Part shown: one piece after another, positions 32,405 through 58,800 of the stretch | How positions within the stretch are numbered: position 1 is the first letter of the stretch | Layout: each line of letters opens with the position of its first letter | From: Haliotis rufescens | Lineage: Eukaryota | Direction of reading: 5' to 3' | Length of the DNA: 64,000 nt | Assembly (NCBI RefSeq): GCF_023055435.1 | Contig: NW_025964334.1 | Coordinates: 3,410,001 to 3,474,000 of the forward strand | Notes under the pieces: model-generated | Told to the model about the DNA's origin: nothing | Databases searched by the model: none | Seen by the model: only the letters and a program-made list of their open reading frames with translations | Position numbers and translations under genes: made by a program

Positions 32405-33491
32405 TACTGAACCGCAAAAGAAACGTCACCATGGATAGACATATGATAAACTTTATTTGTCCCAACACTGTAAACATACTTTGAGACATATTAAAAAGAT
32501 GAAACTTGGCAAAACTGATCATCAAGGTTGAAATTAAAGTGTCAAATGTTCTGAAAGTGAAACACAACACTAGTCTCTGAGAAAATGGCATCACAAGTCA
32601 GTATCCCGTGTGTCCGCCATGTGCATTGGTGACTGTCGTACAACGTCGATACATGGAAAGGCTGAGGCGGTTGATGAAAGCAATAGGCCCTTGAGCCCAT
32701 ACTCTGAGGAACGCCTGACGCAGTATAGCTGCAGTTGTCGGCCTTGGTCGGAGGTCATTCAGCCGTCTTTGAATCTCGTCCCACAGGTGCTCAATTGGAT
32801 TTAAATCGGGACTGAGGGCAGGCCACTGCATGGTTCTGATGCCATTCTGCTGGGGGAAGTCTCTTGTTGCTCGCACAGTGTAGGCACGGGCGTTATCATG
32901 CTGAAACTCGTGGTTGCGGCGACGTGCGATCGAGCTCGAGTTGTTTCCGCAGCAGTTACAAAGCGATCTTAAAGATGCTGTCGCACAATCTAACGATCCT
33001 GACGTCGGGTGCTGTCCCTTGGTCTTCCACTACGTGGTCGGTCATCTGTAGTGTTGGTGGTCTGGTACCGTTGCTGGAGCCTGTGTATGGTCCTTACGTG
33101 GACTTGAAATACATTGCCTACTTGCCGGGCGCTTTGTCCAGCTTGCAATCGTCCAAGGGCTTGGTGTCGCTGATTTCTTGTCAATCTTGGCATGTGGTAG
33201 CAATTCAATAAGGAATGAATGTTATCCGATCTGGGTGGAATTTTATAGGGCAAGAAATGGGGGAACGCATGTGCATTTCAACTCACGTGCATCGGGTTAC
33301 CAGGGCCGTTGATGTGATGCGTTTTGGCCATCGGTTTTATTGTCATCTGCTTTGTTTTTTTTATCATCAAGTTTCATTTTCAGGACAAGGTAATGTTAAA
33401 TTTTAGAAACTTTGACAAAAATTACCCAGATATTTAAATGACACCTTTTCATGCAATGTTACTTGGGTGACGTGTCTTTTGCGGTTCAGTA
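32405..33491 (-). mobile_element. Internally deleted Tc1 element
   Basis: 26-bp TIRs TACTGAACCGCAAAAGA.ACGTCACC, TA flanks; HTH part (MPRLTRNQRHQALGRL) fused to the FQHDNAR...WPALSPDLNPIEH part. Confidence 0.9.
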
Positions 33492-34540: not shown

Positions 34541-34819
34541 CTCAGAAGCGCCAAAGAGAAAGGCTCTACAGAGGGTCCAGAAGGCCGAACAATCATATTT
34601 ACCGAGCTTCTGGTAAAGGTCGTGGAGGAAAGGTCAGGGGTGATATGCTGCAGAACTTGCTGCCGTATGAGGCCGTGGAGAACGTTCCGGTGAAGGAAAG
34701 GATGGACGTGTCCTTGTGGCAAACCAGAGGGCAGGCGAAACCAAACCGACGTCGCCCAAAGAGATGGATCAAAGGTCAATTTCATCTGCAAATGCAAACA
34801 GGTCCCACAGAAACGGATC
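34541..34819 (+). CDS. Hex-like exon: Arg-rich N-terminal extension or propeptide
   Basis: tttgcag acceptor, open frame, C|gtgagt phase-1 donor matching the next exon (C+AT = His). Confidence 0.7.
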
Positions 34820-37800: not shown

Positions 37801-40800
37801 CCGCGGGTGGGTAGGGGGGTGGGGGGTGGGGGGGGGGGGGGGGGGTGGGGGGGATGGTTGGTTAAAGAAGTTGCTCTGTGATGCACCCGAGAGGTTCACC
37901 CTGTAAGAGGCGGTGGCGTCGTGATGTGGTTTCCGATTTCCTACATGGGTACAATGTGTGAAGCCCATTTCTGGTGTCCCCCGCCGTGATATGGCTGGAA
38001 TATTGCTACAACCATCATCAAACCATACTCACTTTTCACTCATGATGTGGGACGGTGTTTGTGGTGGAGGAAGACACGTCTTGTCGTCATCCGTAGAAAT
38101 TGGAACCCTCAATTCTATAGGCATGTCATTCTACAGACAGCTGTTATTTCCCTGCTCAGCAGACAGTCCCAAGGTAAAATGTTCCAACAGGACAATGTCC
38201 GGCCCCACACTGCTCACATTATCCTGAACTTTCTCAGCACCAAAAACGTACCCGTGTTGACCTGACCGTCACGCTCACCGACTCCCCCAATCGCTGTGAG
38301 GAGGCCATACAAGGTACTGATGTCATCGTCGAGGTGCTGTGGAAATGCTCAGCTTTGTGTAAACGTTACAGCTATGACCCCAGATGTGTTTGATTGCTTT
38401 TTGTTTATTCATCCCAACTTCCCAAGATCATATGAAATGTGCAATTTTCTCATTTTATAAGCAGTTCAAGTCGATGTACACTTACTTTTGATCAGTACTT
38501 ACTTATTTATAGTATGACAAGGGATAGAGGGATGCTAGGCATACACTCATAGCCGTACACTCGACCCATGCAGATCCGGGGTGGAATTGGTCTTCAGCAA
38601 CCCATGCTTGCCGTTTATAGGCGACTAACGGTATCGGGTTGTCAGGCTCGCTGACTTGGTTGATGCATGTCATCGTATTCCAGTTGCGTGGAACGATGCT
38701 CATGATGTCAATCACTGGGATGCCTGGTCCAGACTCTATTTTTTATAGAGTTTCGTCATGCAGCTGGATTACTGCTGAGTGCGGCGTTAAACAACAAACA
38801 AACAAACCGTACGCTCATAGCCGTACACTCATAGCCGTACACTCATAGCCGTACACTCATAACCGTACACTCATAGCCGTACACTCATAGCCGTACACTC
38901 ATAGCCGTACACTCATTGCCGTACACTCATAGCCGTACACTCATAGCCGTTCACTCATAGCCGTACACTCATTGCCGTACACTCATATCCGTACACTCAT
39001 TGCCGTACACTCATTGCCGTACACTCATTGCCGTACACTCATAGCCGTACACTCATAGAAGTAGACTCATAGCCGTACACTCAATGCCGTACACTCATTG
39101 CCGTACACTCATAGCCGTACACTCAATGCCGTACACTCAATGCCGTACACTCAATGCCGTACACTCAATGCCGTACACTCATTGCCGTACACTCATAGCC
39201 GTACACTCAATGCCGTACACTCATAGCCGTACACTCATAGCCGTACACTCATAGCCGTACACTCATAGCCGTACACTCATAGCCGTACACTCATTGCCGT
39301 ACACTCATAGCCGTACACTCATTGCCGTACACTCATTGCCGTACACTCATAGCCGTACACTCATTGCCGTACACTCATAGCCGTACACTCATAGGCGCAC
39401 ACTCATAGCCGTACACTCATAGCCGTACACTCATAACCGTACACTCATTGCCGTACACTCATTGCCGTACACTCATAGCCGTACACTCATATCCGTACAC
39501 TCGTAGCCGTACACTCATAGCCGTACACTCATAGCCGTACACTCATTGCCGTACACTCATAGCCGTACACTCATATCCGTACACTCATAGCCGTACACTC
39601 ATAGCCGTACACTCATAGCCGTACACTCATTGCCGTACACTCAATGCCGTACACTCATTGCCGTACATTCATTGCCGTACACTCATAGCCGTACACTCAT
39701 AGCCGTACACTCATTGCCGTACACTCATAGCCGTACACTCATTGCCGTACGCTCATAGCCGTACACTCATTGCCGTACACTCATAGCCGTACACTCATAG
39801 CCGTACACTCATAGCCGTACACTCATTGCCGTACACTCATAGCCGTACGCTAATTGCCGTACGCTCATTGCCGTACACTCATAGCCGTACACTCATTGCC
39901 GTACGCTCATAGCCGTACACTCATTGCCGTACACTCATAGCCGTACACCCATTGCCGTACACTCATAGCCGTACACTCATAGCCGTACACTCATTGCCGT
40001 ACACTCATAGCCGTACACTCATAGCCGTACACTCATTGCCGTACACTCATAGCCGTACACTCATTGCCGTACACTCATAGCCGTACACTCATTGCCGTAC
40101 ACTCATAGCCGTACACTCATTGCCGTACACTCAATGCCGTACACTCAATGCCGTACGCTCATAGCCGTACGCTCATAGCCGTACACTCATAGCCGTACAC
40201 TCATAGCCGTACACTCATAGCCCTACACTCATAGAAGTAGACTCATTGCCGTACACTCATTGCCGTACACTCATTGCCGTACACTCATAGCCGTACACTC
40301 ATAGCCGTACACTCATAGCCGTACACTCATATCCGTACGCTCATAGCCGTACACTCATAGCCGTACACTCATAGCCGTACACTCATAGCCGTACACTCAT
40401 TGCCGTACACTCATAGCCGTACACTCATAGCCGTACACTCATAGCCGTACACTCATTGCCGTACACTCATAGCCGTACACTCATAGCCGTACACTCATAG
40501 CCGTACACTCATTGCCGTACACTCATTGCCGTACACTCATAGCCGTACACTCATAGCCGTACACTCATAGCCCACAATTGTATGTTCCAGCCGTGTGTTC
40601 ACATGGCCGACATCGTGGACTTCCCACGCTTCCACCACCGCGGCGTCATGATCAACACCGGTATCCACTTCCTCCACCCAACAACCATCAAGAAGAACCT
40701 GGTGAGATCAACACTACCATAAGTATCATCAATTTGTATGTGTCATGTATGCAATTCTTCGACCAGCCGCTATGGTCACCCAGTGCCATACATGTCTCCC

Positions 40801-43800
40801 TCGTGTCCTGGTAGTACAGGTGTCTACATTGTCACTGTCTTCTCCAGGAAGCAATGGATCACCGCTATGGTCACCCAGTGCCAACATGTCTATCTAGTGT
40901 CCTGGTAGTACAGGTGTCTATATTGTCACTGTCTTCTCCAGGAAGCAATGGAACACAACAAACTGAATGTCCTGCATTGGCGCTTAGTGGATGACCAGTC
41001 CTTTCCCTGGGTTAGCAAGGCCTACCCTGACCTCAGCAACAGGGTGAGTATCTCCATGTGACCTCAGCAACAGGGAGAGTATCTCCATCTGACCTCAGCA
41101 ACAAAGTGAGTATCTCCATCAGACCTCAGCAACAGGGTGAGTATCTCCATCTGACCTAAGCAATAAAGTGAGTATCTCCATCTGACCTCAGCAACAAAGT
41201 GAGTATCTCCATGTGACCTCAGCAACAGAGTAAGTATCTCCATGTGACCTCAGCAACAAAGTGATTATCTCCATGTGACCTCAGCAACAGGGTGAGTATC
41301 TCCATGTGACCTCAGCAACAGGGTAATTACCTCCATGTGACCTCAGCAACAAAGTGAGTATCTCCATGTGACCTCAGCAACAGGGTGAGTATCTCCATGG
41401 GCAAGACCTACCCTACCCCCCTACCCTGATATCAAAAAGGTCAGCAAGTTACTACCCTGAAATCAGGATAAGAACAAGATATAAGATAAGAATAAGATAA
41501 GTATTATGTGTGTATTATAGAAAGTCCCAGCGCGTGAGAGCATGAAGCTAACATATGGAATACATCTGCGGTGGTAACTATATCGTTGTTTTATTTAAGA
41601 AATAAACGACGAGTGGGAGTTGTTTATCGTACAATTAAACACTGCAGGGAGATCCATTCCTATATGAGATATCAACAATATGTAACAGGCCCTTAAAGGA
41701 TGTTGATAAAATGTACAAGCTTTAAAAATACTTAACCCTATTTATATAATGATGAGTCCTTCAATAGAATCCGACTTCGGTAACGTCGGACAAGTACATG
41801 TTATGCACAGGTGGGTATTTCCCGCATATTCTCACAATCCCCACGTTGATAAATCTTCCAATACCGATTGTCTCCCGGTTCTGGATGCGATCGTTCGGCC
41901 ATCGCGTTTGTCTGCGTTGCCCTGCTACATCTATGGGGAACAACTCACTAGACACTCCTCCCTCAAAAATAACGTCATCAAACATATGACGTCATCAGGT
42001 TGCGAGCGCTTTTTAGAATCTCCAGAAATGAAGTCATGATAGAACAATGTTTCATTGTGAAAATAAACCTCGCTTCGTTCTTCATTGTTCTTTGCGATTT
42101 ATCGCGTAGCTAGCTATCTTATATATTATAGTCACTATGACAGGTCTATAACGTACTGGCATTACGTTCCCCAGAGCTCCAAAAGGGAGACCTACAACGC
42201 TGCTGACATTGCGGGTATCGTGGAGTTCGCCCGACAGAGGGGTATCCGGGTAGTTCCTGAGCTCGACTCTCCAGGTAGGGAGCCAGTCCTTGTACAAGCC
42301 TTACTATGAAGCATGTGGAATTATCTGAGTGAGTTTGGTTTAACGCCGCTTGTAACAGTATTTCAGTTTTATCACGGCGAGATGTGGAGTGAGGCAGGTC
42401 TTGGAGGACGTTTACAGATTAGGTGAAACCCACGACTACGGATAAAGTGTTGACAAACCAAGACACATAATCAGGACGAACTGGGATTCGAACCTACGAT
42501 CACAGTTTCTGACACGCCTTTATTGAAGGGATTGAACTTTGCACAGCGAATGACGGGGCCTTAGACGCTTTGATCTACACGTGGATCCGGGGTCACAGTG
42601 ACCACAGGACTAGTAGTAGCGGAGTGAACCTTGTCTACATACTATATGTTGTACACTGCTGGGATAGAACTAATAAACCCTGTCCAAAACTTATCCCTGT
42701 CGCAATAAATCCTTCAGACATTCGGGCGGTGGGGTAGCCCAGTGGTCAAAGCGTTCGCTCGTCACGCCGAAGATCCGGGTTCGATTGCCCACATGGGTAC
42801 AATGTGTAAAGTCCGTTTCTGGTGTCCCCCGCCATGATATTGCTGGAATATTGCTAAAAGCGGCGTAAAACCATATTCACTCCTTCAGACATTCAGCACC
42901 CTCATGTTCATCTTTGTATACATGTATAATATATATTATAATTAAATGTTTACACCGGACACTATCGATGTTATTTGCTCTGGACAATGCTGTCTTTGCG
43001 AATGAATAAATATTAAACGGTTTCGTTCGAAAATTCCAGGATGTTGTATGTGTGGTATAAATGGATTGAAACTTTGAACAATATTAAGACGAACGCAACA
43101 ACGTAAGCCATGCTTGCCTAACCGTTCTCTTCTCGTCAAGGTCACACCGCCTCTTGGAGAAACGGCGTCCCCGACGTCATGATCAACTGCGCCGACAACA
43201 ACTCTCAACAAGTGCTCGACGTCAGCATTAACATCACCTACACCGTGTTAAGAGGGTTGTGGGATGATATGCTCACAACGTTCCCGGGACGATATGTACA
43301 TCTTGGAGGGGACGAGGTGCCCACGTTGTGTTGGTGAGTGTTGTTACCCACGTGTCTGTTACATGGACGCTGTGTACATCTCGGAGGGGACGAGGTGCCC
43401 ACGTTGTATTGGTGAGTGTTGTTACCCACGTGTCTGTTACATGGACGCTGTGTACATCTGGGAGAGGACGGAGTGTTGTTACACACGTGTCTGTTACATG
43501 GACGCTGTGTACGTCTGGGAGGGGACGGAGTGTTGTTACACACGTGTCTGTTACATGAACGCTGTGTACGTCTGGGAGGGGACGGAGTGTTGTTACCCAC
43601 GTGTCTGTTACATGGACGCTGTGTACATCTGGGAGGGGACGGAGTGTTGTTACACACGTGTCTGTTACATGAACGCTGTGTGCGTCTGGGAGGGGACGGA
43701 GTGTTGTTACACACGTGTCTGTTACATGAACGCTGTGTACGTCTGGGAGGGGACGGAGTGTTGTTACCCACGTGTCTGTTACATGGACGCTGTGTACGTC

Positions 43801-46800
43801 TGGTAGTGAGTGTTGTTACACACGTGTCTGTTACATGAACGCTGTGTACATCTGGGAGGGGACGGAGTGTTGTTACATGTGTGTCTGCTAGTGATGTGAA
43901 TCCTTACACATCTAGGTGGAGACGAGTCGAGATGCCTCATGTTATCGACCATTGGTCGCTGTCATGTACTTGTGGTATTTCTGAAACAAGACTCTCACAC
44001 TCTCACTCACTCACTCACTCACCCACACCTTCCTCAAGACGTACGTAGCACTTGTTATCAAACATAACGCTAACTATTTGTTCACAGGGCTAAATCCAAA
44101 GATGTCGCTATATTCATGGAAAGAGAAAAAATTAAAGATTACGGAGAATTGCAGAACTATTTCACCAGAAGGTAGGTGATCCACTCACGTGGTCCGTGGT
44201 TTCTGAAATACACGAGTAGGAGGCTAGGTGACTAGGAGGATCTACGATGTCATTTAATAAGAAGGATGTTGGAAGTATGTTTTGTTGCCCCCAACCCGAA
44301 CTCTCTGTGGCAGTACAGCACATATATCTTGGCATGCGTCTAAAATATCACTAAAATATCTCACTAAAATATTTTAAATATTCATGTTACATGGATGGTA
44401 TTAACGCTACTTGAGAATTGATATGTTTACATTCTCATGAATTAAAGTTGTAAACCTCTTAAATGTATCCTTTATCAATCAAAATCGTTACTGACATGTG
44501 TGGACCTAAGTCCCCAGGGCTAATAGGGGCACGGGTGACACAGTCACCTGATTCGTTGTGCAACTGACCCTCCATTTAAGTCTCAGCTAATCAATTTATA
44601 TCCAGTGTACAAAACAAACTAATACGCACATCGATATGCACATTGAAACAACATTGGCATCCTGTTTGTAAGTGTTGGAAGTTGATGTTGATTCGTCGGT
44701 TACCTCCCCCTGCATGTCTCCGCCAGAGGGCGCTGCCAGCAACCGCAAACAGGTGGTGTCTGGTGTTACTAGACTGAGCTGTTGTCGCTCGCAGTTCCAA
44801 AACTCCAGTATCATCAATGCTCATTATAAGAGCACCACTTAAAACCAGCGAATTCATCTTAAACCGCCTACGATCATTAGAAGAATGTTTTGGCAAAGAA
44901 CGCCAGACTATGACTCATGGTGTATGATGCAACAGATGACGATGCAGTCGCGTGACGTTCACGTCGCTCGCCGTCTGGGTCGAGTGTGGGCCGACATTTC
45001 CTGATACGCATGGCGGAGTGTTTGTGGACGTGAGTCAAAGATAACATCTCAACAACGTTCCCTTTTTAATTCTTTTTACTACAGTGGTTTTGAAAGGTGA
45101 AAAACAACATTTCCCGCATGCATTGATGTGAGAAAGAATGTTTCGCCTAAACTGTTTGTTGTTAGATAAACGTCTGGAAAACAGTCATGGCGTGTTTTAA
45201 AGAAGAGCTATTATTCTTCACGGTCCGTTGTCTCACTCAAGTCTAGTCCTAGGTCTGGACGTTGTAACTAGTGCCCAGATTGAAAGTTCATACCCGTTAT
45301 GAAATCAAAGTAATCTTTATGTGCAAGATTAGTTAGACAAACGAAAGAGGCGTATGATCGACTTGAATAAAATTTGCCAGGGCTGCTAATTTAGCCGAGC
45401 CTTGTCTTCCATTCCCATGACGCCGTTACTATGACAACCTGTCTCTGGAACAAACATTTCTGGTTATTTCGACAAGGTGTCTTAGAAATCATAAGGTCGA
45501 TGGTTTGAATCTCAACACACAATTGGAGCACACTTTATGTAACAGATACATTGACATGAGCAATAGGGTGTGGTTTGACGCCGCTCTGTAGCAATTTTCC
45601 AGCAATAGCACGGCAAGGGACACCATAAATGGGCTTCACACATGTACGCATGTTGGGAATTGAATCCGGATCTTTGACGTGACGAGCGAACGCTATAACC
45701 ATTTGGCTACCCAATCGGCCCCATAAACATCAGGCCTTTACTCTGGTACGGGGACCCAGTCGTCTAAGGCGCCGCGATTCGCGGTAAAAGTCTGAGACCT
45801 GCATCGTTTGGGACTTTCCTCCCACATTAAGCTAACAGCCGCGATATAACTGGAATATTGATAAAAGCAGCGTTAAACCCAACTCACTCACTCACTCACT
45901 ATTCTGGTAGGATATCTCTCTGCGTGAAGATAGTGACAGATAGGAGGTCGCGTCAGGTGAACTTTCCAATCAGCCAATCAGTATCGAGGCTTCTTCTCAT
46001 ACTAGTGGTCGAGGCATTCATACAAGCATATCTGAGTTCATAATCTCGAAAACGAACAGTTCCGAATGCAAAAAGTAAAGGCGCGCTATTATGTTGTTTA
46101 CGTACTGTCGTTTCTGAGCACCATGGTATCTACAACCCAAGGGATGTGCCATTGAGGTTACATCTGGGTTCTTTGGCGGTTCTCGTTTGCTGAAGTTCGT
46201 AAAGAAATGAAATCGAATTTTTCCGACAGCTGTCATCTGGCCAACGTTCTCCAACTTCGATTGAGCGGTCAAAGGGATTCACACTTCTGCGAACTTTTGT
46301 GGCGGTGCTCTCCGGTCCACGCACAGGTGTCGGTGTTAAAGATCTCAGTTTAATTAAATTGGACTATCACTGATCCCGAGGAGCACATCCAAGGCCTTAT
46401 CCCCGCTCCTTGCCCAAACCCACACACCAAAATTACTACTCAACAATACTTCTCTCAGACCTAAACTTACCTCGGGTTCGATTCCCCACATTGGAACGAC
46501 CGCCTCCGTGGACTAGTGGTACAGCGTTCGTCCGTTGAGTGGACGGTTCGGGGTTCGATCCCCGGCCGCGTCATACCAAAATACGTTAAACGATTTTATT
46601 TGTTGATACCCTGTCTGGTGCTCGGCATTAAGGGGTTAAAACAAGGACTGGTCGGCTCGGAGTCAGTATACTGTGTCTGAGTGGGGTATTCTTGTTAAAC
46701 TGCGGCATGGTATCTCACTGTGCTAGCACTATAAATCGGCATGAGTCCGGACTAGTACAAGCAGCCACACTCACACGTGCTTGACGTCGCTATATAAGTG

Positions 46801-49800
46801 CAATAATCTTGGACGCGACGTCAAACCCCATTTCACCTCGCCTCACCCACATGGGTACAATGTGTGAAGCCCATTTCTAGTGTCCCTCGCCATGATATTG
46901 CTGGAATATTGCTAAAAGCGGCGTAAAACCGAACTCACTTACTCACCCAACCTAACGTCTGTTCGAGCAAACCACCTTTTCACCAATCCTCGCCTGATGA
47001 CGCTGTTAGTGGAATTTCTGTGTTTACCAATATGACTATACATCTGTTGTGGTGGCCAAGTTTTCTTGCCTTGTTATCAAGTCATTGTCTGTTCCAGATT
47101 ATCAAGCATTGTAAATCAGCTAGACAGCAACAGGAAGCTTGTGTTCTGGCAAGATGTACTGGACAGTGGAATCAGTGTACGTACGTTACGTGTAGATGTG
47201 AAACAGTGAAACAATAGTGTGCATATGTTACGTACGGGTGTCAGCGAGTGTTGGACGGTAGACACAAGTGTACGTACGTGACGTGTGGATGTCAGCACGT
47301 ACTAGACAGTCGGTCCAAGTGTACGTACGTTACGTATGGATATCAGTGAGTGCTGGACGGTAGACACGAGTGTACGTACGTGACGTATGGATGTCAGCAC
47401 GTACTAGACTGTCAACCCATGTGTACGTACGTTATGGATGGATGTCAGCGAGTGTTGGTCGGTAGACACAAGTGTACGTACGTGACGTATAGATGTCAGC
47501 ACGTACTAGACAGTCGACCCAAGTGTACGTATGTGACGTATGGATGTCAGCATGTACTAGACAGTCGACCCAAGTGTACGTATGTGACGTATGGATGTCA
47601 GCATGTACTAGACAGTCGACCCAAGTGTACGTACGTGACGTATGGATGTCAGCATGTACTAGACAGTCGACCCAAGTGTACGTATGTGACGTATGGATGT
47701 CAGCATGTACTAGACAGTCGACCCAAGTGTACGTACGTTATGGATGGATGTCAGCATGTACTAGACAGTCGACCCAAGTGTACGTATGTGACGTATGGGT
47801 GTCAGCATGTACTAGACAGTCGACCCAAGTTTACGTACGTGACGTATGGGTGTCAGCGAGTGTTGGTCGGTAGACACAAGTGTACGTACGTGACGTATGG
47901 ATGTCAGCATGTACTAGACAGTCGACCCAAATGTACGTATGTGACGTATGGATGTCAGCATGTACTAGACAGTCCACCCAAGTGTACGTACGTGACGTAT
48001 GGATGTCAGCACATACTAGACAGTCGACCAAAGTGTACGTATGTGACGTATGGATGTCAGCATGTACTAGACAGTCGACCCAAGTGTACGTATGTGACGT
48101 ATGGATGTCAGCATGTACTAGACAGTCGACCCAAGTGTACGTACGTTATGGATGGATGTCAGCATGTACTAGACAGTCGACCCAAGTGTACGTACGTGAC
48201 GTATGGATGTCAGCATGTACTAGACAGTCGACCCAAGTGTACGTATGTGACGTATGGATGTCAGCATGTACTAGACAGTCGACCCAAGTGTACGTATGTG
48301 ACGTATGGATGTCAGCATGTACTAGACAGTCGACCCAAGTGTACGTACGTTATGGATGGATGTCAGCATGTACTAGACAGTCGACCCAAGAGTACGTATG
48401 TGACGTATGGATGTCAGCATGTACTAGACAGTCGACCCAAGTGTACGTATGTAACGTATGGGTGTCAGCATGTACTAGACAGTCGACCCAAGTGTACGTA
48501 CGTGACGTATGGGTGTCAGCGAGTGTTGGTCGGTAGACACAAGTGTACGTACGTGACGTATGGATGTCAGCATGTACTAGACAGTCGACCCAAGTGTACG
48601 TATGTGACGTATGGATGTCAGCACGTACTAGACAGTCGACCCAAGTGTACGTATGTGACGTATGGATGTCAGCATGTACTAGACAGTCGACCCAAGTGTA
48701 CATATGTGACGTATGGGTGTCAGCATGTACTAGACAGTCGACCCAAGTGTACGTACGTGACGTATGGGTGTCAGCGAGTGTTGGTCGGTAGACACAAGTG
48801 TACGTACGTGACGTATGGATGTCAGCATGTACTAGACAGTCGACCCAAGTGTACGTATGTGACGTATGGGTGTCAGCATGTACTAGACAGTCGACCCAAG
48901 TTTACGTACGTGACGTATGGGTGTCAGCGAGTGTTGGTCGGTAGACACAAGTGTACGTACGTGACGTATGGATGTCAGCATGTACTAGACAGTCGACCCA
49001 AATGTACGTATGTGACGTATGGATGTCAGCATGTACTAGACAGTCCACCCAAGTGTACGTACGTGACGTATGGATGTCAGCACATACTAGACAGTCGACC
49101 AAAGTGTACGTATGTGACGTATGGATGTCAGCATGTACTAGACAGTCGACCCAAGTGTACGTATGTGACGTATGGATGTCAGCATGTACTAGACAGTCGA
49201 CCCAAGTGTACGTACGTTATGGATGGATGTCAGCATGTACTAGACAGTCGACCCAAGTGTACGTACGTGACGTATGGATGTCAGCATGTACTAGACAGTC
49301 GACCCAAGTGTACGTATGTAACGTATGGGTGTCAGCATGTACTAGACAGTCGACCCAAGTGTACGTACGTGACGTATGGGTGTCAGCGAGTGTTGGTCGG
49401 TAGACACAAGTTCACGTACGTGACGTATGGATGCCAGCATGTACTAGACAGTCGACCCAAGTGTACGTATGTGACGTATGGATTTCAGCATGTACTAGAC
49501 AGTCGACCCAAGTGTACGTATGTGACGTATGGGTGTCAGCATGTACTAGACAGTCGACCCAAGTGTACGTACGTGACGTATGGGTGTCAGCGAGTGTTGG
49601 TCGGTAGACACAAGTGTACGTACGTGACGTATGGATGTCAGCATGTACTAGACAGTCGACCCAAGTGTACGTATGTGACGTATGGATGTCAGCATGTACT
49701 AGACAGTCGACCCAAGTGTACGTATGTGACGTATGGATGTCAGCACGTACTAGACAGTCGACCCAAGTGTACGTATGTGACGTATGGATGTCAGCATGTA

Positions 49801-52800
49801 CTAGACAGTCGACCCAAGTGTACGTATGTGACGTATGGATGTCAGCATGTACTAGACAGTCGACCCAAGTGTACGTACGTTATGGATGGATGTCAGCATG
49901 TACTAGACAGTCGACCCAAGAGTACGTATGTGACGTATGGATGTCAGCATGTACTAGACAGTCGACCCAAGTGTACGTATGTAACGTATGGGTGTCAGCA
50001 TGTACTAGACAGTCGACCCAAGTGTACGTACGTGACGTATGGGTGTCAGCGAGTGTTGGTCGGTAGACACAAGTGTACATATGTGACGTATGGGTGTCAG
50101 CATGTACTAGACAGTCGACCCAAGTGTACGTACGTGACGTATGGGTGTCAGCGAGTGTTGGTCGGTAGACACAAGTGTACGTACGTGACGTATGGATGTC
50201 AGCATGTACTAGACAGTCGACCCAAGTGTACGTATGTGACGTATGGATGTCAGCATGTACTAGACAGTCGACCCAAGTGTACGTATGTGACGTATGGATG
50301 TCAGCACGTACTAGACAGTCGACCCAAGTGTACGTATGTGACGTATGGATGTCAGCACGTACTAGACAGTCGACCAAAGTGTACGTATGTGACGTATGGA
50401 TGTCAGCATGTACTAGACAGTCGACCCAAGTGTACGTACGTTATGGATGGATGTCAGCATGTACTAGACAGTCGACCCAAGAGTACGTACGTGACGTATG
50501 GATGTCAGCATGTACTAGACAGTCGACCCAAGTGTACGTATGTAACGTTTGGGTGTCAGCATGTACTAGACAGTCGACCCAAGTGTACGTACGTGACGTA
50601 TGGGTGTCAGCGAGTGTTGGTCGGTAGACACAAGTGTACGTACGTGACGTATGGATGTCAGCACGTACTAGACAGTCGACCCAAGTGTACGTATGTGACG
50701 TATGGATGTCAGCACGTACTAGACAGTCGACCAAAGTGTACGTATGTGACGTATGGATGTCAGCATGTACTAGAGAGTCGACCCAAGTGTACGTTTGTGA
50801 CGTATTGATGTCAGCATGTACTAGACAGTCGACCCAAGTGTACATATGTGACGTATGGATGTCAGCATGTACTAGACAGTCGACCCAAGTGTACGTATGT
50901 GACGTATGGTTGTCACCGAGTGTTGGTCGGTAGACACAAGTGTACGTACGTGACGTATGGTTGTCAGCATATACTAGACAGTCGACCCAAGTGTACGTAT
51001 GTGACGTATGGGTGTCAGCGAGTGTTGGACGGTAGACACAAGTGAATGTACGTGACGTATGGATGTCAGCACGTACAAGACAGTCGACTCAAGTGTGCGT
51101 ACGTGACGTGTGGAAGTCAGCACGTACTAGACAGTCGACCCAAGTGTACGTATGTGACGTGTGAATGACAGCGAGTGCTAAACGGACGACACAAGTGTAC
51201 GTGTGTTACGTGTGGATGTCAGCGAATGCTGGACGGACGACACAAGTGTACGTTTGTTACGTATGGATGTCAGCGAATGCTTGACGGACGACACAAGTGT
51301 ACGTACGTGACGTATTGATGTCAGCGAGTGCTTGACGGACGACACAAGTGTACGTTTGTTACGTATGGATGTCAGCGAATGCTTGACGGACGACACAAGT
51401 GTACGTACGTGACGTATGGATGTCAGCGAGTGATGGACGGACGACACAAGTGTACGTACGTGACGTATGGATGTCAGCGAGTGGTAAACGGACGATACAA
51501 GTGTACGTGTGTTACGTGTGGATGTCAGCGAATGCTTGACGGACGACACAAGTGTACGTACGTGACGTATGGATGTCAGCGAGTGATGGACGGACGACAC
51601 AAGTGTACGTACGTGACGTATGGATGTCAGCGAGTGATGGAAGGACGACACAAGTGTACGTACGTGACGTATGGATGTCAGCGAGTGCTAGACGGACGGC
51701 ACAAGTGTACGTGTGTTACGTGTGGATGTCAGCGAGTGATGGACGGACGACACAAGTGTACGTACGTGACGTATGGATGTCAGCGAGTGATGGACGGACG
51801 ACACAAGTGTACGTACGTGACGTATGGATGTCAGCGAGTGCTAGATGGACGACACAAGTGTACGTGTGTTACGTGTGGATGTCAGCGAGTGCTAGATGGA
51901 CGACACAAGTGTACGTACGTTACGTGTGGATGTCAGCAAGTGCTGGACGGACGACACAAGTGTACGTACGTTACGTGTGGATGTCAGCGAGTGCTAGATG
52001 GACGACATAAGTGTACGTGTGTTACGTGTGGATGTCAGCGAGTGCTAGATGGACGACACAAGTGTACGTGTGTTACGTGTGGATGTCAGCGAGTGCTAGA
52101 TGGACGACACAAGTGTACGTACGTGACGCATGGATGTCAGCGAGTGCTGGACGGACGACACAAGTGTACGTACGTTACGTGTGGATGTCAGCGAGTGCTA
52201 GACGGACGACACAAGTGTACGTACGTGACGTATGGATGTCAGCGAGTGCTAGATGGACGACACAAGTGTACGTACGTGACGTATGGATGTCAGCGAGTGC
52301 TAGACGGACGACACAAGTGTACGTACGTGACGTATGGATGTCAGCGAGTGCTAGACGGAAGACACAAGTGTACGTACGTGACGTATGGATGTCAGCGAGT
52401 GCTAGACGGACGACACAAGTGTACGTACGTGACGTATGGATGTCAGCGAGTGCTAGACGGACGACACAAGTGTACGTGTGTTCCGTGTGGATACATGAAT
52501 GTCAGTGAATGAAGGCCAAGGGTGATCCCATTACTTCTGTATCATTACACCAATACCACATGGGGCGAGGTCTCTTTAAACGTGTTCCTCATGTTATATC
52601 TGTGGAGAATCGAACCTGTGGATGAATACACACACAAAGCCGTTCGATTGTTCGGCGTCAAGTCGTACTGGGAAGCGTTACCAAAGGATAAAGAGGCTTC
52701 ATTTAGTGTCCAACAGTGTGACTGTTACGTCATGATAAAACGTTAGGCAGATCAGTAGAAAACTCGACTTTCCTGAAGCTACCTCAGTTGGATTCTGGTG

Positions 52801-55800
52801 TCCCTAGCAGTGGTTACCGTATCCGTCATCCGTTCGTACGGGTCCTCACCACGGGTGTTCACTACGGTTGTTCAATATGATTTTTCACAATGGGTCTTCA
52901 CAACGGGTCTTCACCACGGGTGTTCACTACCGCTGTTCACTACGGTTGTTCATGACTGGTCTTCACTACGGTTCTTCACTGCAGCTGTTCACTACGGGTA
53001 TTCACTATGGGTGTTCATTACGGGTCTTTACTATGGGTCTTCACTACGGGTGTTCACAACGGGTATTCGCTACAGCTGTTCACTATGGGTCTTTACAACG
53101 GTTGTTTACTACGGGTGTTCACTATGGCTGTTCACTGCGGGTCTTCACTACGGGTCTTTACTACGGTTGTTCACTACAGGTCTTCACTACGGCTGTTCAC
53201 AACCGGTCTTTACAACGGGTCTTCCCTACAGTTGTTCACTGCGGTTGTTAGCTATGGGTCTTCACTTCGGGTGTTCACTATGGGTCTTCTCTACGACTGT
53301 TCACAACGGGTCTTCACTATGGTTGTTAACTATGGGTGTTCACTACGGATATTCACTACGCTACGGGTCTTCACTACGGGTATTCATTCCGCTACGGGTG
53401 TTCACTACGGGTATTCACTACGCTACGGGTCTTCACTACGGGTTTTCACTATGCTATGGGTGTTCACTGCGGTTGTTAACTACGGTTGTTCACTACGGTT
53501 GTTAACTACGGTTGTTCACTACGGGTCTTCATTACGGGTCTTCACTACGGGTCTTCACTACAGGTGTCCACTATGGTTATTTTCACTATGGGTCTTCACT
53601 ACGGTTGTTCACAATTGGTCTTCACTACGGTTGTTCACTACAGCTTTTCACTACGGGTCTTCACTATGCTACGGGTCTTCACTCCGGGTCTTCACTACGG
53701 GTCTTCACTACGGGTTTTCACTTCGGGTCTTCAATTCGCTACGGGTCTTCACAACGGTTGTTCTGTATGGGACTTCACTACGGTTGTTCACTTTGGTTGT
53801 TCACTACGGGTCTTCACTGCGTTTGTTCACTACGGTTGTTCACTATGGGTCTTCAGTACGGGTGTTCACTACAGGTATTCACTACGCTACGGATGTTCAC
53901 TACGGGTCTTCACTACGCTTCGGGTCTTCATTACGGGTCTTCACTACGGGTCTTCACTGCTCCTGTTGGGGTACAATAGCCCAGTCATCTTAGACAACCC
54001 TATTCGCTCGGTGAAGTTGTATTCTTTCAGTGTGCCAGAAACTGATCGTGGGTTCGAATCCCAGCTTCCCCCGATCATGCTTCTAGGTCTGTCAGCACCA
54101 AACCTGTGCTGTTTGGTTCTCTGAAAGTGGTAAACGTCTTAGACCTGCATCACCTCCCACACCAAGCTGACACCCCGTGATACAACTGGAATACTGTTCA
54201 AAGCGGCATAAAACACAATGCACGCACTCTGAAGTCGAGATATGACGCCTCTTGTCTTCTTACGTGTTTGTTGCGCAATACACCCTTTGTATTCAAAGCA
54301 ACGCTAAACCAAACTCGATCAATCGCTCACTCTATGCTCCTGAAATATTCGGTGCTGATGAAGTCTTTGACCCTACAAATATGGCTTCCTAGTAATAAAA
54401 TTGTTTGTTCTTTAACGCTGCACTCAGCAATATTCCAGCTATATGACGGCGGTCTGTAAATAATTGTGATTTACATCATGAGGATCGATCTACGCAATTG
54501 AGATAGATTATATGCATCAAACACGTCAGCGAGCCTGACCACCCGATCCCGTTAGTTGCCTCTTACGACAAGCATGGGTTGCTGAAGACCTATTCTACCC
54601 CGGATCTTCACGGGCTTTTAGTAGTAAAGATAAGTAGTTGCGTTAGTAGACTATATTGTATAGACTTACAACTGGGGTTCGTATCCCATTTGTGTCCCGA
54701 GTGCCTGTAGTCGCTGAGTGTCATTTCTACATTTTTGCATCTTTTCTTTCATTCAGATAGATGAACGAGCCGTAATTCAAATATGGAAACCGAATCCTAA
54801 GGCCGCCACGACTTTAGCGGTCAGCAGAGGCCATAGGGTCATCTACTCAAGTCCGTGGTGTCTGAACTACGTCACATCCGGTATGGACTGGGCGATGCTC
54901 TACTTAGCCGATCCCCTGGAACACACAGGTCAGTAGGTGCATATTTTACATCCCTAGAACACACAGGTCAGTAGGTGCATATTTTACATCCCGAGAACAC
55001 ACAGGTCAGTAGGTGCATATTTTACATCCCGAGAACACACAGGTCAGTAGGTGCATATTTTACATCCCTAGAACACACAGGTCAGTAGGTGCATATTTTA
55101 CATCCCGAGAACACATAGGTCAGTAGGTGCATATTTTACATCCCGAGAACACACAGGTCAGTAGGTGCATATTTTACATCCCCTGAACGCACAGGTCAGT
55201 GGGTGCGTATTGTACATCCCCGTAACGCACAGTGGGTTGATAGATGTAGGAGGGCGCGGAGTCATCCCACAGATGACATCCTTACCTTGTCAGCTTGCTG
55301 TCGGGGTTAACCTCTTTGGTCATGTGGACAAGGCGTCCGACCTGTGATCAGAAGGTCCGTGGTTCGAATCCAATCACGGGACTCTGAAATTCTATGGCCG
55401 CAACATTGGCGCCCAAAGTGGGGCTGAGCATGTTCATATTAAATTTGTACAAAATAAGCCTCAGTACCCTACTATGCGGCCCGGGACGTGCCTTCTGTTG
55501 ACAGGGGAGTATGTAGCAGGGCATGGAGTCATCCCACAAATGACCTCCTAACATTGTCAGCTTGCTGACGGGGTTAACCTCTTTGGCCATGTGGACAAGG
55601 CGTCCGACCTCGGATCAGAAGGTCCGTGGTTCGAATCCCAACAGGGGACTCGGAAATGTTATGGCCGCTACAAAGATATGCGCACAGACTTACAGGACAA
55701 TTTGAGAGGAGGTGATTTGAAATGGTGTGCATGCACGTGCAGGTGTGCTTGCAGATGCTTGCACTAAACCGGACTTCAGTGCGTGAGTGCGTGCGCACGT

Positions 55801-58800
55801 ACCAGTCCTGACAAATGCCGGGTTTAAAGTGCGAAGCCCACGGAGACACCATGCAGCATTTTACATTGGATACCCCACTCGGTATACTGAGTACCAGTCC
55901 TTGTTTTCTCACCAGTGCCAGATAGGTAACAAGCACTATCGTTTCAGGTATTTTAGTATGACCCGACCAGGGCATCGAGCCACCAACCTCCCGCTCCCCG
56001 GGCAAACGTTCAATCCACTAGACCACGGAGCCGGCCACATTGTTTTTGTTTTTTGTTTTGATTGATTGTTGTTTAACGCCCCACTCAGCAATAGTCCAGT
56101 CATATGACGGCGGTCTGTAAATAATCGAGTCTGGACCAGACAGTTCTGTTGTCTCGATCCATGCAATTGGGATACAATCACATGCATTAACCAAGTCATC
56201 GCCTGGCCACCCGATCCCTCTGTCGCCTCTTTCGCCTCACTGGATTGTCTGGTCCAGACTCGATTATTTACAGACCGCCGTCATATAGCTGGAATATTGC
56301 TGAGTGCGACGTAAACAACAACAAACAAACAAACAAACACACACACCACCGTATTGTTACAGAATCCCTCATCTTCCTTTGTTTCACTGGTTGTTGTTGT
56401 TTTTGTTGTTTTTGTAGTTGACATCAGCTACACAACACACTGAAATAGTCCTTAACAGACCGTTTCCTGCCGGTTGTTATCACGTGCGTGACAGAGGCAC
56501 TATTGTCTGTACTGGAACGTCGCAGGCAAACAATGGTGTCTGACAATGTCGAAGTTGTAATCCATAAGCTCACGCTGTCTTCAGTCCCAATAACGGTGTA
56601 TTGCGCAGTACACAGGTCAGAGGACAACACAGCCCATATCCTCGCTTCAGAGTGAGTTGGTTTAACACCACTTTAATGTCATGACTGTCACATTGATGTG
56701 AGCGGAAAGCCCGTTTACAACTGACGTGAAACACGGGTATGGTGCTGACAAACCAAGAAACATAATGAGATTCGAACTATGGCCAAGGGTTTTAGTATCC
56801 AAGGGACGAAACTCTACCTTTTATGTGTGTTTGTTGTTTAACGCCGCACTCTAACTTTATGACTTGACCTTAGTCTCTTCATATAAAAACGAGGCATGGT
56901 GGAGTACTGTCATAAATGTGATTGTTCGGGGTCGCAATCTGCGAAATCACAACGCACTTCACATCAATGCCAAACATCGGAAGTGTATGAAGAAAACATA
57001 GTCCCTCTGGAATATTCCCCGATAGAAACCTATTTCCGGATACGTACTGCCCCAACAAAAGCAATAACCGTGGATAATGTTGAATGTGAAACACTGACGA
57101 GAGACAAGCCGTATTGTTTATATAAAGAAAACAAGTCAGTGTATCACCAAGTCCGGGAGATCCGGGAACGGGGCCTCTACTGTCTGCACTTCCTGAACTC
57201 CGCGCATCATGTGTGCTGCGTGACCCATTGCATGCCGGGTCAATAAGACTTACCACTGCGCATTGATACATTCAGCAGCCATCACGGCTCGGATAAAAAA
57301 AAGATATTTTGGTAACATTTCATGCTTATTTATTTCTTTAGCAGATGTTGTCGACATATCGGAGTTAATCATACCCGCTGAACTCCCTTGGCGGTCTTCT
57401 GTGGCCGGATGTTGCTATCTCCAACAGGAATTCAGTTATTCCGAACAACGGGTCTTTATCTGAAGGGGGCGTTGTTCTTGCAGGAGAGGTGCACGGGCAG
57501 GAGTAGAAACTGACATCCACATTCTTTCCATTGTGTGCAACATGTGTGCTGTATGTTTGTTGTATGAAGACGTGGGCGTTTGGCGCCCAAACCTGCCGAA
57601 AAGTTGGTATTATTACGTGACGATATGTTTGAGAAAAGAAAAGGCCAAAAGAAGAACGAAAAAAGTATTTTTTTCACAATTGTTTCTTAAAAACACAGTA
57701 CCTACTTCGCGAAAGAATTTCTTCCAATGTCTGACAGTGCCTTGTAGAGCGAATGGGTTTCAGCTCCCCTCATTGATTTCAATACAGATTCCGGATTTCA
57801 GTGTAGCGTTTGAAAGTACCAACATACAGTGTTGGTACAAGAACACTGTATATCATTACCGGGTGCCCTACATGTTACATATCACAATGTATATTACCGG
57901 GTGCCCTACATGTTACATATCACAATGTATATTACCGGGTGCCCTACACGTTATATATCGCAATGTATATTTCCGGGTGCCCTACATGTTACACATCTCC
58001 GTGTATATTTCCGGGTGCCCTACATGTTACACATCTCCGTGTATATTATCGGGTGCCCTACATGTTACACATCTCCGTGTATATTACCCGGTGCCCTACA
58101 TGTTACACATCTCCGTGTATATTATCGGGTGCCCTACATGTTACACATCTACGTGTATATTATCGGGTGCCCTACATGTTACACATCTACGTGTATATTA
58201 TCGGGTGCCCTACATGTTACACATCTCCGTGTATATTATCGGGTGCCCTACATGTTACACATCTACGTGTATATTATCTGGTGCCCTACATGTTACACAT
58301 CTCCGTGTATATTATCTGGTGCCCTACATGTTACACATCTCCGTGTATATTATCGGGTGCCCCACATGTTACACATCTCCGTGTATATTATCTGGTGCCC
58401 CACATGTTACACATCTCCGTGTATATTATCGGGTGCCCCACATGTTACACATCTCCGTGTATATTATCTGGTGCCCCACATGTTACACATCTCCGTGTAT
58501 ATTATCGGGTGCCCTACATGTAACACATCTCCGTGTATATTATCGGGTGCCCTACATGTTACACATCTCCGTGTATATTATCGGGTGCCCTACATGTTAC
58601 ACATCTACGTGTATATTATCGGGTGCCGCAGGTTACTAATGTATAACGTTCTGCCTCGAGGTACTCACATGTTCTGACTTTGGTTGTAGTTGGTGCCACT
58701 GAAGAGGAGGTGGTGATGGGTGGGGAGGCCTGCGTCTCGGGGGAACACGCGGTGGACTCCAGCCTTCTACAGACGGTGTGGTGAGTGACGGCAGGTGGTA

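What the first reader, a model, noticed from the sequence alone, without database searches (positions are those of the whole stretch)
40654..58739. Intact GH20 hexosaminidase with a rebuilt -1 subsite: candidate pseudo-enzyme or new specificity
Seen: 13 exons splice without stops or frameshifts. HLGGDE and the equivalents of H262, W373, W392, D207 and E462 are kept. Changed motifs: LDTSRH to INTGIH (D>N 40654, R>I 40663), HWH to HWR (40981), PWYL to PWCL (54859), CMWGE to CVSGE (58737). Established: in HEXA numbering R178 binds the sugar OH3/OH4, Y421 hydrogen-bonds the acetamido group needed for substrate-assisted catalysis, and W460 stacks the sugar; R178 substitutions cause B1-variant Tay-Sachs. 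Inference: coordinated loss of pocket residues in an undamaged gene suggests a non-catalytic GH20 (lectin, matrix or regulatory subunit, analogous to chitinase-like GH18 proteins) or a new substrate, not decay.
Basis: partly seen in the sequence, partly recalled or inferred. Interest (0 to 1): 0.8.

Follow-up and report, generated by a model that had tools for sequence, protein, structure and literature searches.

The report
Abalone hexosaminidase relative without sugar pocket
An intact abalone gene descended from the sugar-cleaving enzyme hexosaminidase has lost the residues that grip its sugar yet is kept in four abalone species, so it probably serves a non-enzymatic role that is still unknown.

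Summary
The window (red abalone, Haliotis rufescens) carries a complete GH20 gene of 14 coding exons, not 13, at 21465-62160 on the + strand. All 13 introns are GT-AG, and the exons reproduce NCBI protein XP_048242294 exactly. The changed motifs sit at the stated coordinates. In HEXA numbering they are D175N, R178I, H204R, Y421C and W460S; D207, H262, D322, E323, W373, W392 and E462 are kept. These residues are invariant or nearly so in 214 other animal homologues. They are also kept in four paralogues of the same genome.

Orthologues exist in H. cracherodii, H. rubra and H. asinina and share the losses. The pocket keeps drifting between species: R178 to I/T, Y421 to C/S, E323 to D, W392 to L. 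Substitutions between species still avoid ancestrally conserved columns (19/160 against 73/210, p=3e-7). The modelled fold matches human HexB (TM 0.95).

Best reading: a genus-restricted, secreted, non-catalytic GH20 protein under fold-level constraint. Expression could not be shown, codon-level dN/dS could not be run, and the H. rubra models are frame-disturbed. No natural GH20 pseudoenzyme turned up in my paper searches.

The parts
21465..21519 (+). Exon 1: start codon and signal-peptide-like hydrophobic N-terminus
   Evidence: Exact match to residues 1-18 of P0338, P0120 and P0339. Donor gtaagt. Modelled as a helix, residues 3-30.
34541..34834 (+). Exon 2: basic N-terminal extension that canonical HEX lacks. 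It holds a 23-residue stretch invariant in four species (34660-34728) and an RRRPKR dibasic site (34747-34764). Isoform X2 uses an earlier donor.
   Evidence: coordinates. (invariant [23 protein letters not shown] in ruf, cra, rub, asi). pLDDT is below 50 for residues 32-127. No Pfam family and no Atlas hit.
35734..36096 (+). Exon 3: most of the N-terminal GH20b2 domain
   Evidence: PF14845 at 60.7 bits on P0338 residues 138-267.
36798..36910 (+). Exon 4: end of the GH20b2 domain. An alternative donor at 36937, inside the in-frame 27-bp array, adds VHTTAHSEQ in NCBI isoforms X1 and X2.
40591..40701 (+). Exon 5: first barrel strand, INTGIH in place of LDTSRH. D175N at 40654-40656 and R178I at 40663-40665.
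40942..41043 (+). Exon 6: HWRLVDD. H204R at 40981-40983; D207 and D208 kept.
42175..42274 (+). Exon 7
43141..43333 (+). Exon 8: GHT (H262 kept) and HLGGDE (D322 and E323 kept in this species)
44088..44171 (+). Exon 9
47098..47176 (+). Exon 10: FWQDV (W373 kept)
54757..54928 (+). Exon 11: IQIW (W392 kept here), PWCL (Y421C at 54859-54861) and VTSG, where human HEXB Tyr456 is Ser. Tyr456 is the residue a subunit lends to its partner's active site.
   Evidence: Role of beta-Tyr456 from passages of PMC4449183.
58690..58780 (+). Exon 12: [11 protein letters not shown]460S at 58737-58739; E462 kept.
59858..59962 (+). Exon 13: [12 protein letters not shown] (canonical WPRA reads WSRA here)
62100..62160 (+). 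Exon 14: C-terminal tail with the last conserved Cys, and stop codon TGA at 62158-62160. The canonical xGxC tail element is changed.
   Evidence: Consensus. Role of the tail from passages of PMC4449183.

Best explanation
The gene encodes a signal-peptide-bearing protein with the GH20 fold. It descends from a HEXA/HEXB-type beta-N-acetylhexosaminidase and, in the collections searched, occurs only in abalones.

Shown:
- It has lost the arginine that binds the sugar's 3- and 4-hydroxyls, the tyrosine that steers the 2-acetamido group, and one tryptophan of the acetamido pocket.
- It also carries D175N and H204R, and a Tyr-to-Ser change at the residue (human beta-Tyr456) that one subunit lends to its partner's site.
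- The barrel, the N-terminal domain, the conserved cysteines and 115 of 160 highly conserved columns are kept.
- Changes between abalone species still avoid conserved columns.
- The 14 former pocket positions differ between species about as often as unconstrained columns do.

Inferred: it no longer hydrolyses HexNAc glycosides by substrate-assisted catalysis, and it is kept for a role that needs the fold but not the chemistry.

My committed guess for that role is untested. It acts by binding: either as a catalytically dead dimer partner of the canonical abalone HEX subunits (animal GH20 enzymes work only as dimers), or as a stand-alone binder. A cleavable basic N-terminal extension with an invariant 23-residue peptide would be a second functional module.
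For: - Gene intact: 14 exons and 13 unique GT-AG introns, identical to NCBI XP_048242292-4.
- Losses mapped on human HEXB and HEXA chains.
- The same positions are invariant or nearly so in 214 other animal homologues and kept in four paralogues of the same genome.
- Orthologues in four species share N175, R204, S460 and Ser at the beta-Tyr456 position.
- The pocket drifts. H. rufescens and H. asinina differ at 4 of 14 pocket sites, against 15/146 other conserved columns (p=0.066) and 73/210 variable columns (p=0.78). E323 is Asp in H. asinina and H. rubra, and W392 is Leu in H. asinina.
- Constraint persists. Differences between H. rufescens and H. asinina fall at 19/160 conserved, 33/142 intermediate and 73/210 variable columns (Fisher 2.7e-7). 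The canonical gene gives 5/160, 23/143 and 68/215.
- Quick tree: stem of 2.8 changes per column, but a crown path of 0.35 against 0.27 for the canonical gene.
- Fold: AF2 pLDDT 81.8 with 402 residues at or above 90. Foldseek against 1nou_A gives target-normalised TM 0.95 and rmsd 1.5. PF00728 scores 243.6 bits.
- Cysteine columns C165, C220, C400, C447, C621 and C639 are kept in H. rufescens and H. asinina.
- Dimers are needed for catalysis, and beta-Tyr456 plus the partner's C-terminus complete the other site (passages of PMC4449183).
Against: - No evidence of expression. 0 of 20 holder rows are on record as RNA. No fragment of this gene appeared among 128 candidates searched with a four-exon piece; the best identity was 59% at 39% coverage. 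No full-length Logan transcript appeared.
- No codon-level dN/dS, because orthologue DNA was out of reach.
- Both H. rubra models read the start of exon 7 in another frame. One is also frame-shifted in exon 12, and one is flagged LOW QUALITY. The canonical H. rubra protein carries the same flag, so assembly error is possible but unproven.
- In H. rufescens the pocket is not hit more than other conserved columns: 5/14 against 40/146, p=0.54.
- D322-E323, D207, H262, W373 and E462 are all kept here, so some chemistry or sugar contact is not excluded.
- Conserved columns evolve 3.8 times faster than in the canonical gene.
- The binding or partner role has no direct support.
Confidence: 0.6

Rival explanations
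1. It is still an enzyme, with a rebuilt -1 subsite and a new substrate. Candidates are a sugar without the 2-acetamido group or a charged sugar. The new arginine at the H204 position, Asn175 and Ser460 would form the new pocket.
For: - The D322-E323 pair is intact in H. rufescens and H. cracherodii.
- D207, H262, W373 and E462 are kept in all four species.
- N175, R204 and S460 are fixed in all four species.
- The fold is fully kept.
Against: - E323 is Asp in H. asinina and H. rubra, and W392 is Leu in H. asinina.
- The R178 and Y421 positions differ between species (I/T, C/S).
- The pocket differs between species at the rate of unconstrained columns.
- The residue lent to the partner's site (beta-Tyr456) and the C-terminal element are changed too.
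Confidence: 0.15
2. It is a dying or silent relic. The duplicate lost its function and is slowly decaying, and the gene models exist only because the frame has not yet broken.
For: - No RNA evidence was found.
- Both H. rubra copies are frame-disturbed.
- Conserved columns change 3.8 times faster than in the canonical gene.
- 45 of 160 highly conserved columns are already changed.
Against: - The frame, start, stop and all 13 GT-AG introns are whole in H. rufescens.
- Full-length proteins exist in H. cracherodii and H. asinina, although 73/210 unconstrained columns differ between the lineages.
- Substitutions avoid conserved columns (p=2.7e-7).
- 34 of 45 derived states predate the split of the lineages.
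- The crown rate is close to the canonical gene's.
- NCBI lists three isoforms. As far as I recall, its pipeline derives isoforms from transcript alignments; I did not check this.
Confidence: 0.12
3. It is an assembly or annotation artefact.
For: None beyond the many minisatellites at exon borders, which could mislead assemblers.
Against: - 20 of the 24 listed runs, from 9 studies, hold all or part of the stretch. Five of them hold at least half of its sampled words.
- The same residue states occur in proteins from three other species' assemblies.
Confidence: 0.02

Closest known systems
Human lysosomal beta-hexosaminidase subunits HEXB and HEXA (PDB 1nou, 1o7a, 2gjx)
   Same: - Two-domain architecture (GH20b2 plus GH20 barrel), 33-34% identity, model TM 0.94-0.95 and rmsd 1.5-1.8.
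- D207, H262, D322, E323, W373, W392 and E462 are kept.
- Conserved cysteine columns are kept.
- Exon layout of the multi-exon HEXA/B type, 14 coding exons here. That the human genes also have 14 is recalled.
   Different: - D175N, R178I, H204R, Y421C and W460S.
- Ser at the beta-Tyr456 position, a changed C-terminal element, and P-to-S in WPRA.
- About 110 extra basic, disordered N-terminal residues.
- No activity data.
Canonical abalone HEX gene (G000 contig C1; NCBI XP_046377967 and XP_046377968 and their orthologues)
   Same: Same genome, same family, multi-exon gene, present in the same four species.
   Different: - It keeps all pocket residues.
- It keeps 152/160 conserved columns, against 115/160 for this gene.
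- It evolves more slowly: ruf-cra 98.6% identity against 95.5%, and ruf-asi about 83% against 73%.
- No paralogue stands out as the parent.
GH18 chitinase-like proteins (YKL-40, YKL-39) and other pseudoglycosidases listed in PMC7828330 (klotho GH1, CyRPA GH33)
   Same: A glycosidase fold kept after loss of residues needed for hydrolysis, and lineage-restricted duplicates of an expanded family (passages of PMC7828330).
   Different: The pattern of loss is the reverse. Chitinase-like proteins lose the catalytic acid and keep the sugar cleft. Here the sugar-gripping residues go, and the acid is kept in two species. The family also differs, and that review lists no GH20 case.

Membership tests
Glycoside hydrolase family 20 (sequence and fold family; Pfam PF00728 plus PF14845) | Sequence match above the curated cut-offs | tested here: met
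   On P0338, which is identical to the window's exons: PF00728 243.6 bits (cut-off 22.3) and PF14845 60.7 bits (cut-off 27). Exon by exon, 4 of the 10 exon ORFs sent pass the PF00728 cut-off and one passes PF14845.
Glycoside hydrolase family 20 (sequence and fold family; Pfam PF00728 plus PF14845) | GH20b domain followed by a (beta/alpha)8 barrel | tested here: met
   AF2 model with pLDDT 81.8. Foldseek TM 0.95 and rmsd 1.5 against human HexB 1nou_A.
Active beta-N-acetylhexosaminidase (EC 3.2.1.52, substrate-assisted mechanism) | Catalytic Asp-Glu pair (HEXA D322-E323) | tested here: met
   HLGGDE is present in the window. The pair reads Asp-Asp in H. asinina and H. rubra.
Active beta-N-acetylhexosaminidase (EC 3.2.1.52, substrate-assisted mechanism) | -1 subsite residues R178, Y421 and W460 (HEXA numbering), which hold the sugar and its acetamido group | tested here: not met
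   Ile, Cys and Ser in the window. In 214 other homologues the counts are 213, 214 and 214 of 214.
Active beta-N-acetylhexosaminidase (EC 3.2.1.52, substrate-assisted mechanism) | Elements lent to the dimer partner's site (beta-Tyr456 and the C-terminal xGxC element) | tested here: not met
   Ser at the Tyr456 position in all four species. The tail reads differently from the consensus. The roles come from passages of PMC4449183.
Active beta-N-acetylhexosaminidase (EC 3.2.1.52, substrate-assisted mechanism) | Measured hydrolysis of HexNAc glycosides | not testable with these tools
   This needs recombinant protein.
Pseudoenzyme (pseudoglycosidase) | Descent from an enzyme family, with loss of residues needed for the ancestral reaction | tested here: met
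Pseudoenzyme (pseudoglycosidase) | Maintained by selection (intact orthologues, constraint on the fold) | tested here: inconclusive
   At protein level the feature is met: full-length proteins in three species, and avoidance of conserved columns at p=2.7e-7. Codon-level dN/dS was not run, and the H. rubra copies are frame-disturbed.
Pseudoenzyme (pseudoglycosidase) | Expressed as a protein | tested here: inconclusive
Only NCBI gene models exist.
Pseudoenzyme (pseudoglycosidase) | Retained or new binding function | not testable with these tools
   This needs glycan arrays or pull-downs.

The most novel reading that the evidence does not exclude
This is the first natural GH20 pseudo-hexosaminidase: an abalone-only protein that has swapped chemistry for binding. 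Asn175, Arg204 and Ser460, fixed in four species, would form a new conserved pocket or surface. The protein would pair with the canonical HEX subunits as a dead partner that cannot complete their active sites, because beta-Tyr456 is replaced by Ser. It would thereby tune hexosaminidase activity. The cleavable basic extension would release or present its invariant 23-residue peptide as a separate signal.
Probability: 0.2. Interest if true: 0.7.

Novelty: new variant of a known kind. Interest (0 to 1): 0.45.

Why it matters
Pseudoglycosidases are known for GH18, GH1 and GH33. I found no natural GH20 case in print: 0 papers for 'GH20' plus 'pseudoenzyme', and one review for 'hexosaminidase' plus 'pseudoenzyme', which lists no GH20 case. 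A search for 'GH20' plus 'catalytically inactive' plus 'lack' found 20 papers, of which 15 were listed; none shows one by title or abstract.

The pattern of loss here is unusual, because the sugar grip goes while the catalytic pair stays. The gene therefore bears on which parts of a GH20 fold are kept once catalysis is dispensable. It also bears on whether an obligate-dimer glycosidase can evolve a dead regulatory subunit.

In practice, four abalone genome annotations name this protein 'beta-hexosaminidase subunit alpha/beta-like'. Counts of 'active' GH20 genes in molluscs, such as those in PMC7560691 (passages), would include it. Without expression or activity data its importance stays moderate.

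Tried and rejected
- **Codon-level dN/dS against orthologue DNA.** I replaced it with protein-level tests.
- **Spliced transcript fragments in the protein collection.** None of this gene among 128 candidates.
- **Parent paralogue.** tblastn of P0120 against the four other HEXA/B-like loci gave similar per-exon identities of about 29-72%, so none stands out.
- **Placement on a tree.** The careful search did not finish in two runs. Only the quick tree is used. Its placement of the long branch outside all bilaterian HEX is probably long-branch attraction and is not claimed.
- **Origin of the N-terminal extension.** No Pfam family and no Atlas hit.
- **Neighbouring genes.** Only minisatellites and Tc1/mariner-type remnants were seen.
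- **Scan notebook by words.** Nothing for 'hexosaminidase GH20'.
- **Shell-matrix role.** GH20 proteins appear in a Laternula shell protein table and among Mytilus shell-repair genes (passages). Nothing ties this gene to shell.
- **Papers on abalone hexosaminidases.** Listings only; none concerns this gene.
- **Supplements.** I did not ask for supplementary files. Expression tables of PMC7560691, abalone shell, tissue or gamete proteome tables, and Table S1 of PMC4774620 (dimer-interface residues) might bear on expression and on the partner idea.

Full report
**What is there**

The window is G000:C556:3410001-3474000. A search with Pfam PF00728 over the whole genome gave 55 matches among 62 candidates. 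Three of them lie in this window. Reading the frames and the DNA showed HEXA/B-like exons on the + strand.

- Ten exon ORFs were run against Pfam. Four pass the PF00728 cut-off and one passes PF14845.
- Exon 8 alone (63 residues) was run against 1.84 billion representatives. It gave 119 hits at E up to 0.001. The best was P0001 at 66% identity.

P0001 is NCBI 'beta-hexosaminidase subunit alpha-like [Haliotis asinina]'. A search with P0001 scored 8000 candidates; 758 had E up to 1e-10 and the best 120 were listed. It found two more abalone proteins at 70-78% identity. The next hit was at 39% or less.

P0120 (H. rufescens isoform X2) is 100% identical to the window's exons. Its cluster holds isoforms X1 and X3 and an H. 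cracherodii orthologue. Contig C1 of G000 has the same length, 94,228,061 bases, as the NCBI contig of the canonical H. rufescens gene. So the window is red abalone.

I never built or sent a joined model of my own. The whole-protein analyses below use these database proteins.

**Gene structure**

Isoform X3 (P0338, 640 residues) maps to 14 exons with one unique GT-AG solution for each of the 13 introns:
- 21465-21519
- 34541-34834
- 35734-36096
- 36798-36910
- 40591-40701
- 40942-41043
- 42175-42274
- 43141-43333
- 44088-44171
- 47098-47176
- 54757-54928
- 58690-58780
- 59858-59962
- 62100-62160, with TGA as the stop codon

Its count of 13 exons is one short, and its span misses exons 1-4, 13 and 14.

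**Residue mapping**

phmmer against PDB chains aligns P0120 and P0338 to human HEXB (E 1e-97 to 1e-101) and HEXA. The index of chain 2gjx_A plus 22 reproduces the published numbers at D207, H262, D322, E323, W373, W392, Y421, W460 and E462. That fixes the changes as D175N, R178I, H204R, Y421C and W460S.

Passages of PMC3377590 and PMC9126592 name these residues:
- R178, D322, Y421 and E462 for binding and orienting the sugar.
- E323 as the catalytic residue.
- W392 and Y421 as flanking a hydrophobic pocket.

That R178 substitutions cause the B1 variant is recalled. I saw only a search listing.

| HEXA position | Other full-length animal homologues with the canonical residue (of 214) |
|---|---|
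| D175 | 213 (one gap) |
| R178 | 213 (the exception, P0249, looks like a bad model) |
| H204 | 214 |
| E323 | 214 |
| Y421 | 214 |
| W460 | 214 |

The four other HEXA/B-like loci of the same genome (contigs C1, C79, C190, C594) keep R, HWH, Y and W.

**Trans-acting elements**

According to passages of PMC4449183, HexA, HexB and OfHex1 dimerise through the GH20 domains, and dimerisation is essential. Beta-Tyr456 and the partner's C-terminal element complete the other subunit's site.

In chain 3lmy_A the index gives Y450, D452 and L453. These match the HEXB numbers as I recall them, so the index appears to equal HEXB numbering. There Tyr456 aligns with a serine of P0338. It is Ser in all four abalone species. 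The C-terminal xGxC consensus is also changed.

**Orthologues and rates**

Pairwise protein identities (the canonical values compare matched isoforms):

| Species pair | Divergent gene | Canonical C1 gene |
|---|---|---|
| H. rufescens - H. cracherodii | 95.5% | 98.5-98.7% |
| H. rufescens - H. rubra | 73-74% | about 86% |
| H. rufescens - H. asinina | 73% | about 83.5% |
| H. rubra - H. asinina | 81% | about 92% |

Pocket states in H. rufescens / H. cracherodii / H. rubra / H. asinina:

| HEXA position | ruf / cra / rub / asi |
|---|---|
| D175 | N / N / N / N |
| R178 | I / I / T / T |
| H179 | H / H / H / Q |
| H204 | R / R / R / R |
| E323 | E / E / D / D |
| W392 | W / W / W / L |
| Y421 | C / C / S / C |
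| W460 | S / S / S / S |
| D207, H262, D322, W373, E462 | kept in all four |

**Constraint test**

Columns were classed by their conservation among 68 non-abalone homologues. The table gives the columns that differ between H. rufescens and H. asinina, out of those compared.

| Column class | Divergent gene | Canonical gene |
|---|---|---|
| At least 90% conserved | 19/160 | 5/160 |
| 60-90% conserved | 33/142 | 23/143 |
| Below 60% conserved | 73/210 | 68/215 |

- For the divergent gene, Fisher's test of the first class against the last gives p = 2.7e-7.
- The background rate at variable columns is the same in both genes. The excess lies in formerly conserved columns, yet these are still protected.
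- The divergent protein keeps the canonical residue in 115/160 conserved columns, against 152/160 for the canonical abalone protein.
- 34 of its 45 derived states are shared with H. asinina.

The 14 pocket sites behave as follows:
- They differ between the two species at 4/14. That compares with 15/146 for other conserved columns (p = 0.066) and 73/210 for variable columns (p = 0.78).
- In H. rufescens the pocket is not hit more often than other conserved columns: 5/14 against 40/146, p = 0.54.
- In H. asinina it is: 8/14 against 41/146, p = 0.034.

A quick tree of 39 rows (the careful search did not finish) gives the divergent clade 100% support and a stem of 2.8 changes per column. The crown path from H. 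rufescens to H. asinina is 0.35, against 0.27 for the canonical gene. I do not trust the clade's position outside all bilaterian HEX.

**Fold**

AlphaFold2 on a 71-row alignment gave mean pLDDT 81.8 and pTM 0.79, with 402 residues at or above 90. Residues 32-127 are disordered. Foldseek's best matches are human HexA and HexB, with target-normalised TM 0.94-0.95 and rmsd 1.5-1.8. The cysteine columns C165, C220, C400, C447, C621 and C639 (P0120 numbering) are kept in H. rufescens and H. asinina. That they form the three HexB disulfides is recalled.

**N-terminal extension**

Exon 2 encodes a basic stretch that canonical HEX lacks. It has no Pfam family and no Atlas hit. Within it, 23 residues are invariant in four species, and a dibasic RRRPKR or RRRSKR site follows. 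Reading this as a furin-type cleavage site is inference from the motif only.

**What speaks against a working gene**

- No RNA evidence. Of 24 runs listed, 20 hold all or part of the stretch, 5 hold half or more of its words, and none is on record as RNA.
- A 170-residue piece spanning exons 5-8 found no fragment of this gene among 128 candidates.
- Both H. rubra models read the start of exon 7 in another frame, and one also misreads exon 12. The canonical H. rubra protein is flagged LOW QUALITY as well. Assembly error is therefore plausible but unproven.
No codon-level dN/dS could be run.

**Reading**

- Shown: an intact, genus-restricted GH20 paralogue that has lost the cis and trans elements holding HexNAc in the -1 subsite. 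Its fold is kept and fold-level constraint persists.
- Inferred: no hexosaminidase activity, with a non-catalytic role. My confidence is 0.6.
- Rivals: a rebuilt pocket for a new ligand (0.15), a silent relic (0.12), an artefact (0.02).
- Compared with GH18 chitinase-like proteins the loss is reversed, so a plain GlcNAc lectin seems less likely than a partner-binding or other-ligand role.

**Literature**

- 'GH20' plus 'pseudoenzyme': 0 papers.
- 'Hexosaminidase' plus 'pseudoenzyme': 1 review. In the passages read it lists GH18, GH1 and GH33 examples but no GH20 case.
- 'GH20' plus 'catalytically inactive' plus 'lack': 20 papers, 15 listed. None shows a natural case by title or abstract.
- PMC7560691 (passages) reports GH20 expansion in molluscs and assigns a single activity.

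I did not ask for supplementary files. Expression tables and proteome lists there may bear on this gene.

Noticed in passing
window 36907-37626, 41028-41399, 43287-43877, 54919-55220; also 40767-40956: Four of the gene's 13 splice donors (exons 4, 6, 8 and 11) lie inside tandem arrays whose unit contains the exon end plus the donor. One acceptor (exon 6) is duplicated in a 94-bp repeat. Large arrays fill other introns: 14 bp x 126 at 38807-40572 and 51 bp x 102 at 47254-52477. Another first-reader note already covers this (s1-816364).
   Followed up: partly
window 36907-37626: The 27-bp array is in frame with exon 4. NCBI isoforms X1 and X2 use the second donor and carry one extra VHTTAHSEQ unit, while X3 does not. 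This relates to note s1-816530.
   Followed up: partly
L032:9304-9128 and L032:7159-6974 (G000 contig C1, minus strand): The canonical abalone HEX gene has two tandem copies of the exon that holds the WYL motif. NCBI isoforms X1 and X2 differ only within residues 395-448 (WYLNY against WYLSR), and H. asinina has a third form (WYLNK). By recall, in humans the residues just after the WYL motif distinguish the alpha from the beta subunit. Abalone may therefore make alpha-like and beta-like subunits by mutually exclusive splicing.
   Followed up: partly
L031:8159-8067 and L031:6748-6656 (G000 contig C594): Another HEXA/B-like paralogue carries two identical copies of the exon encoding GGEACLWAEY, about 1.4 kb apart.
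   Followed up: no
G000 contig C46, about 23.99-24.11 Mb, and 1.22-1.25 Mb: A cluster of large-exon GH20 matches that looks like several tandem genes, some with stops inside. This is part of the 55 GH20 matches in the genome.
   Followed up: no
window 26916-27956 (-), 32601-33029 (-), 18464-18838 (+): Tc1/mariner-type transposase remnants. A 347-residue open frame in intron 1 has HTH_29, HTH_28 and HTH_Tnp_Tc3_2 matches, and a second remnant in intron 1 (32601-33029) has a DDE_3 match. A third, with DDE_3 just below its cut-off, lies upstream of exon 1 (18464-18838).
   Followed up: partly
proteins P0121 and P0341 (H. rubra), exon 7 equivalent: The two H. rubra copies are 94% identical and lie on different contigs. 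They share the same out-of-frame reading at the start of exon 7. The H. rufescens sequence there has short A and G runs. This could be a real frameshift or a repeated homopolymer error.
   Followed up: partly
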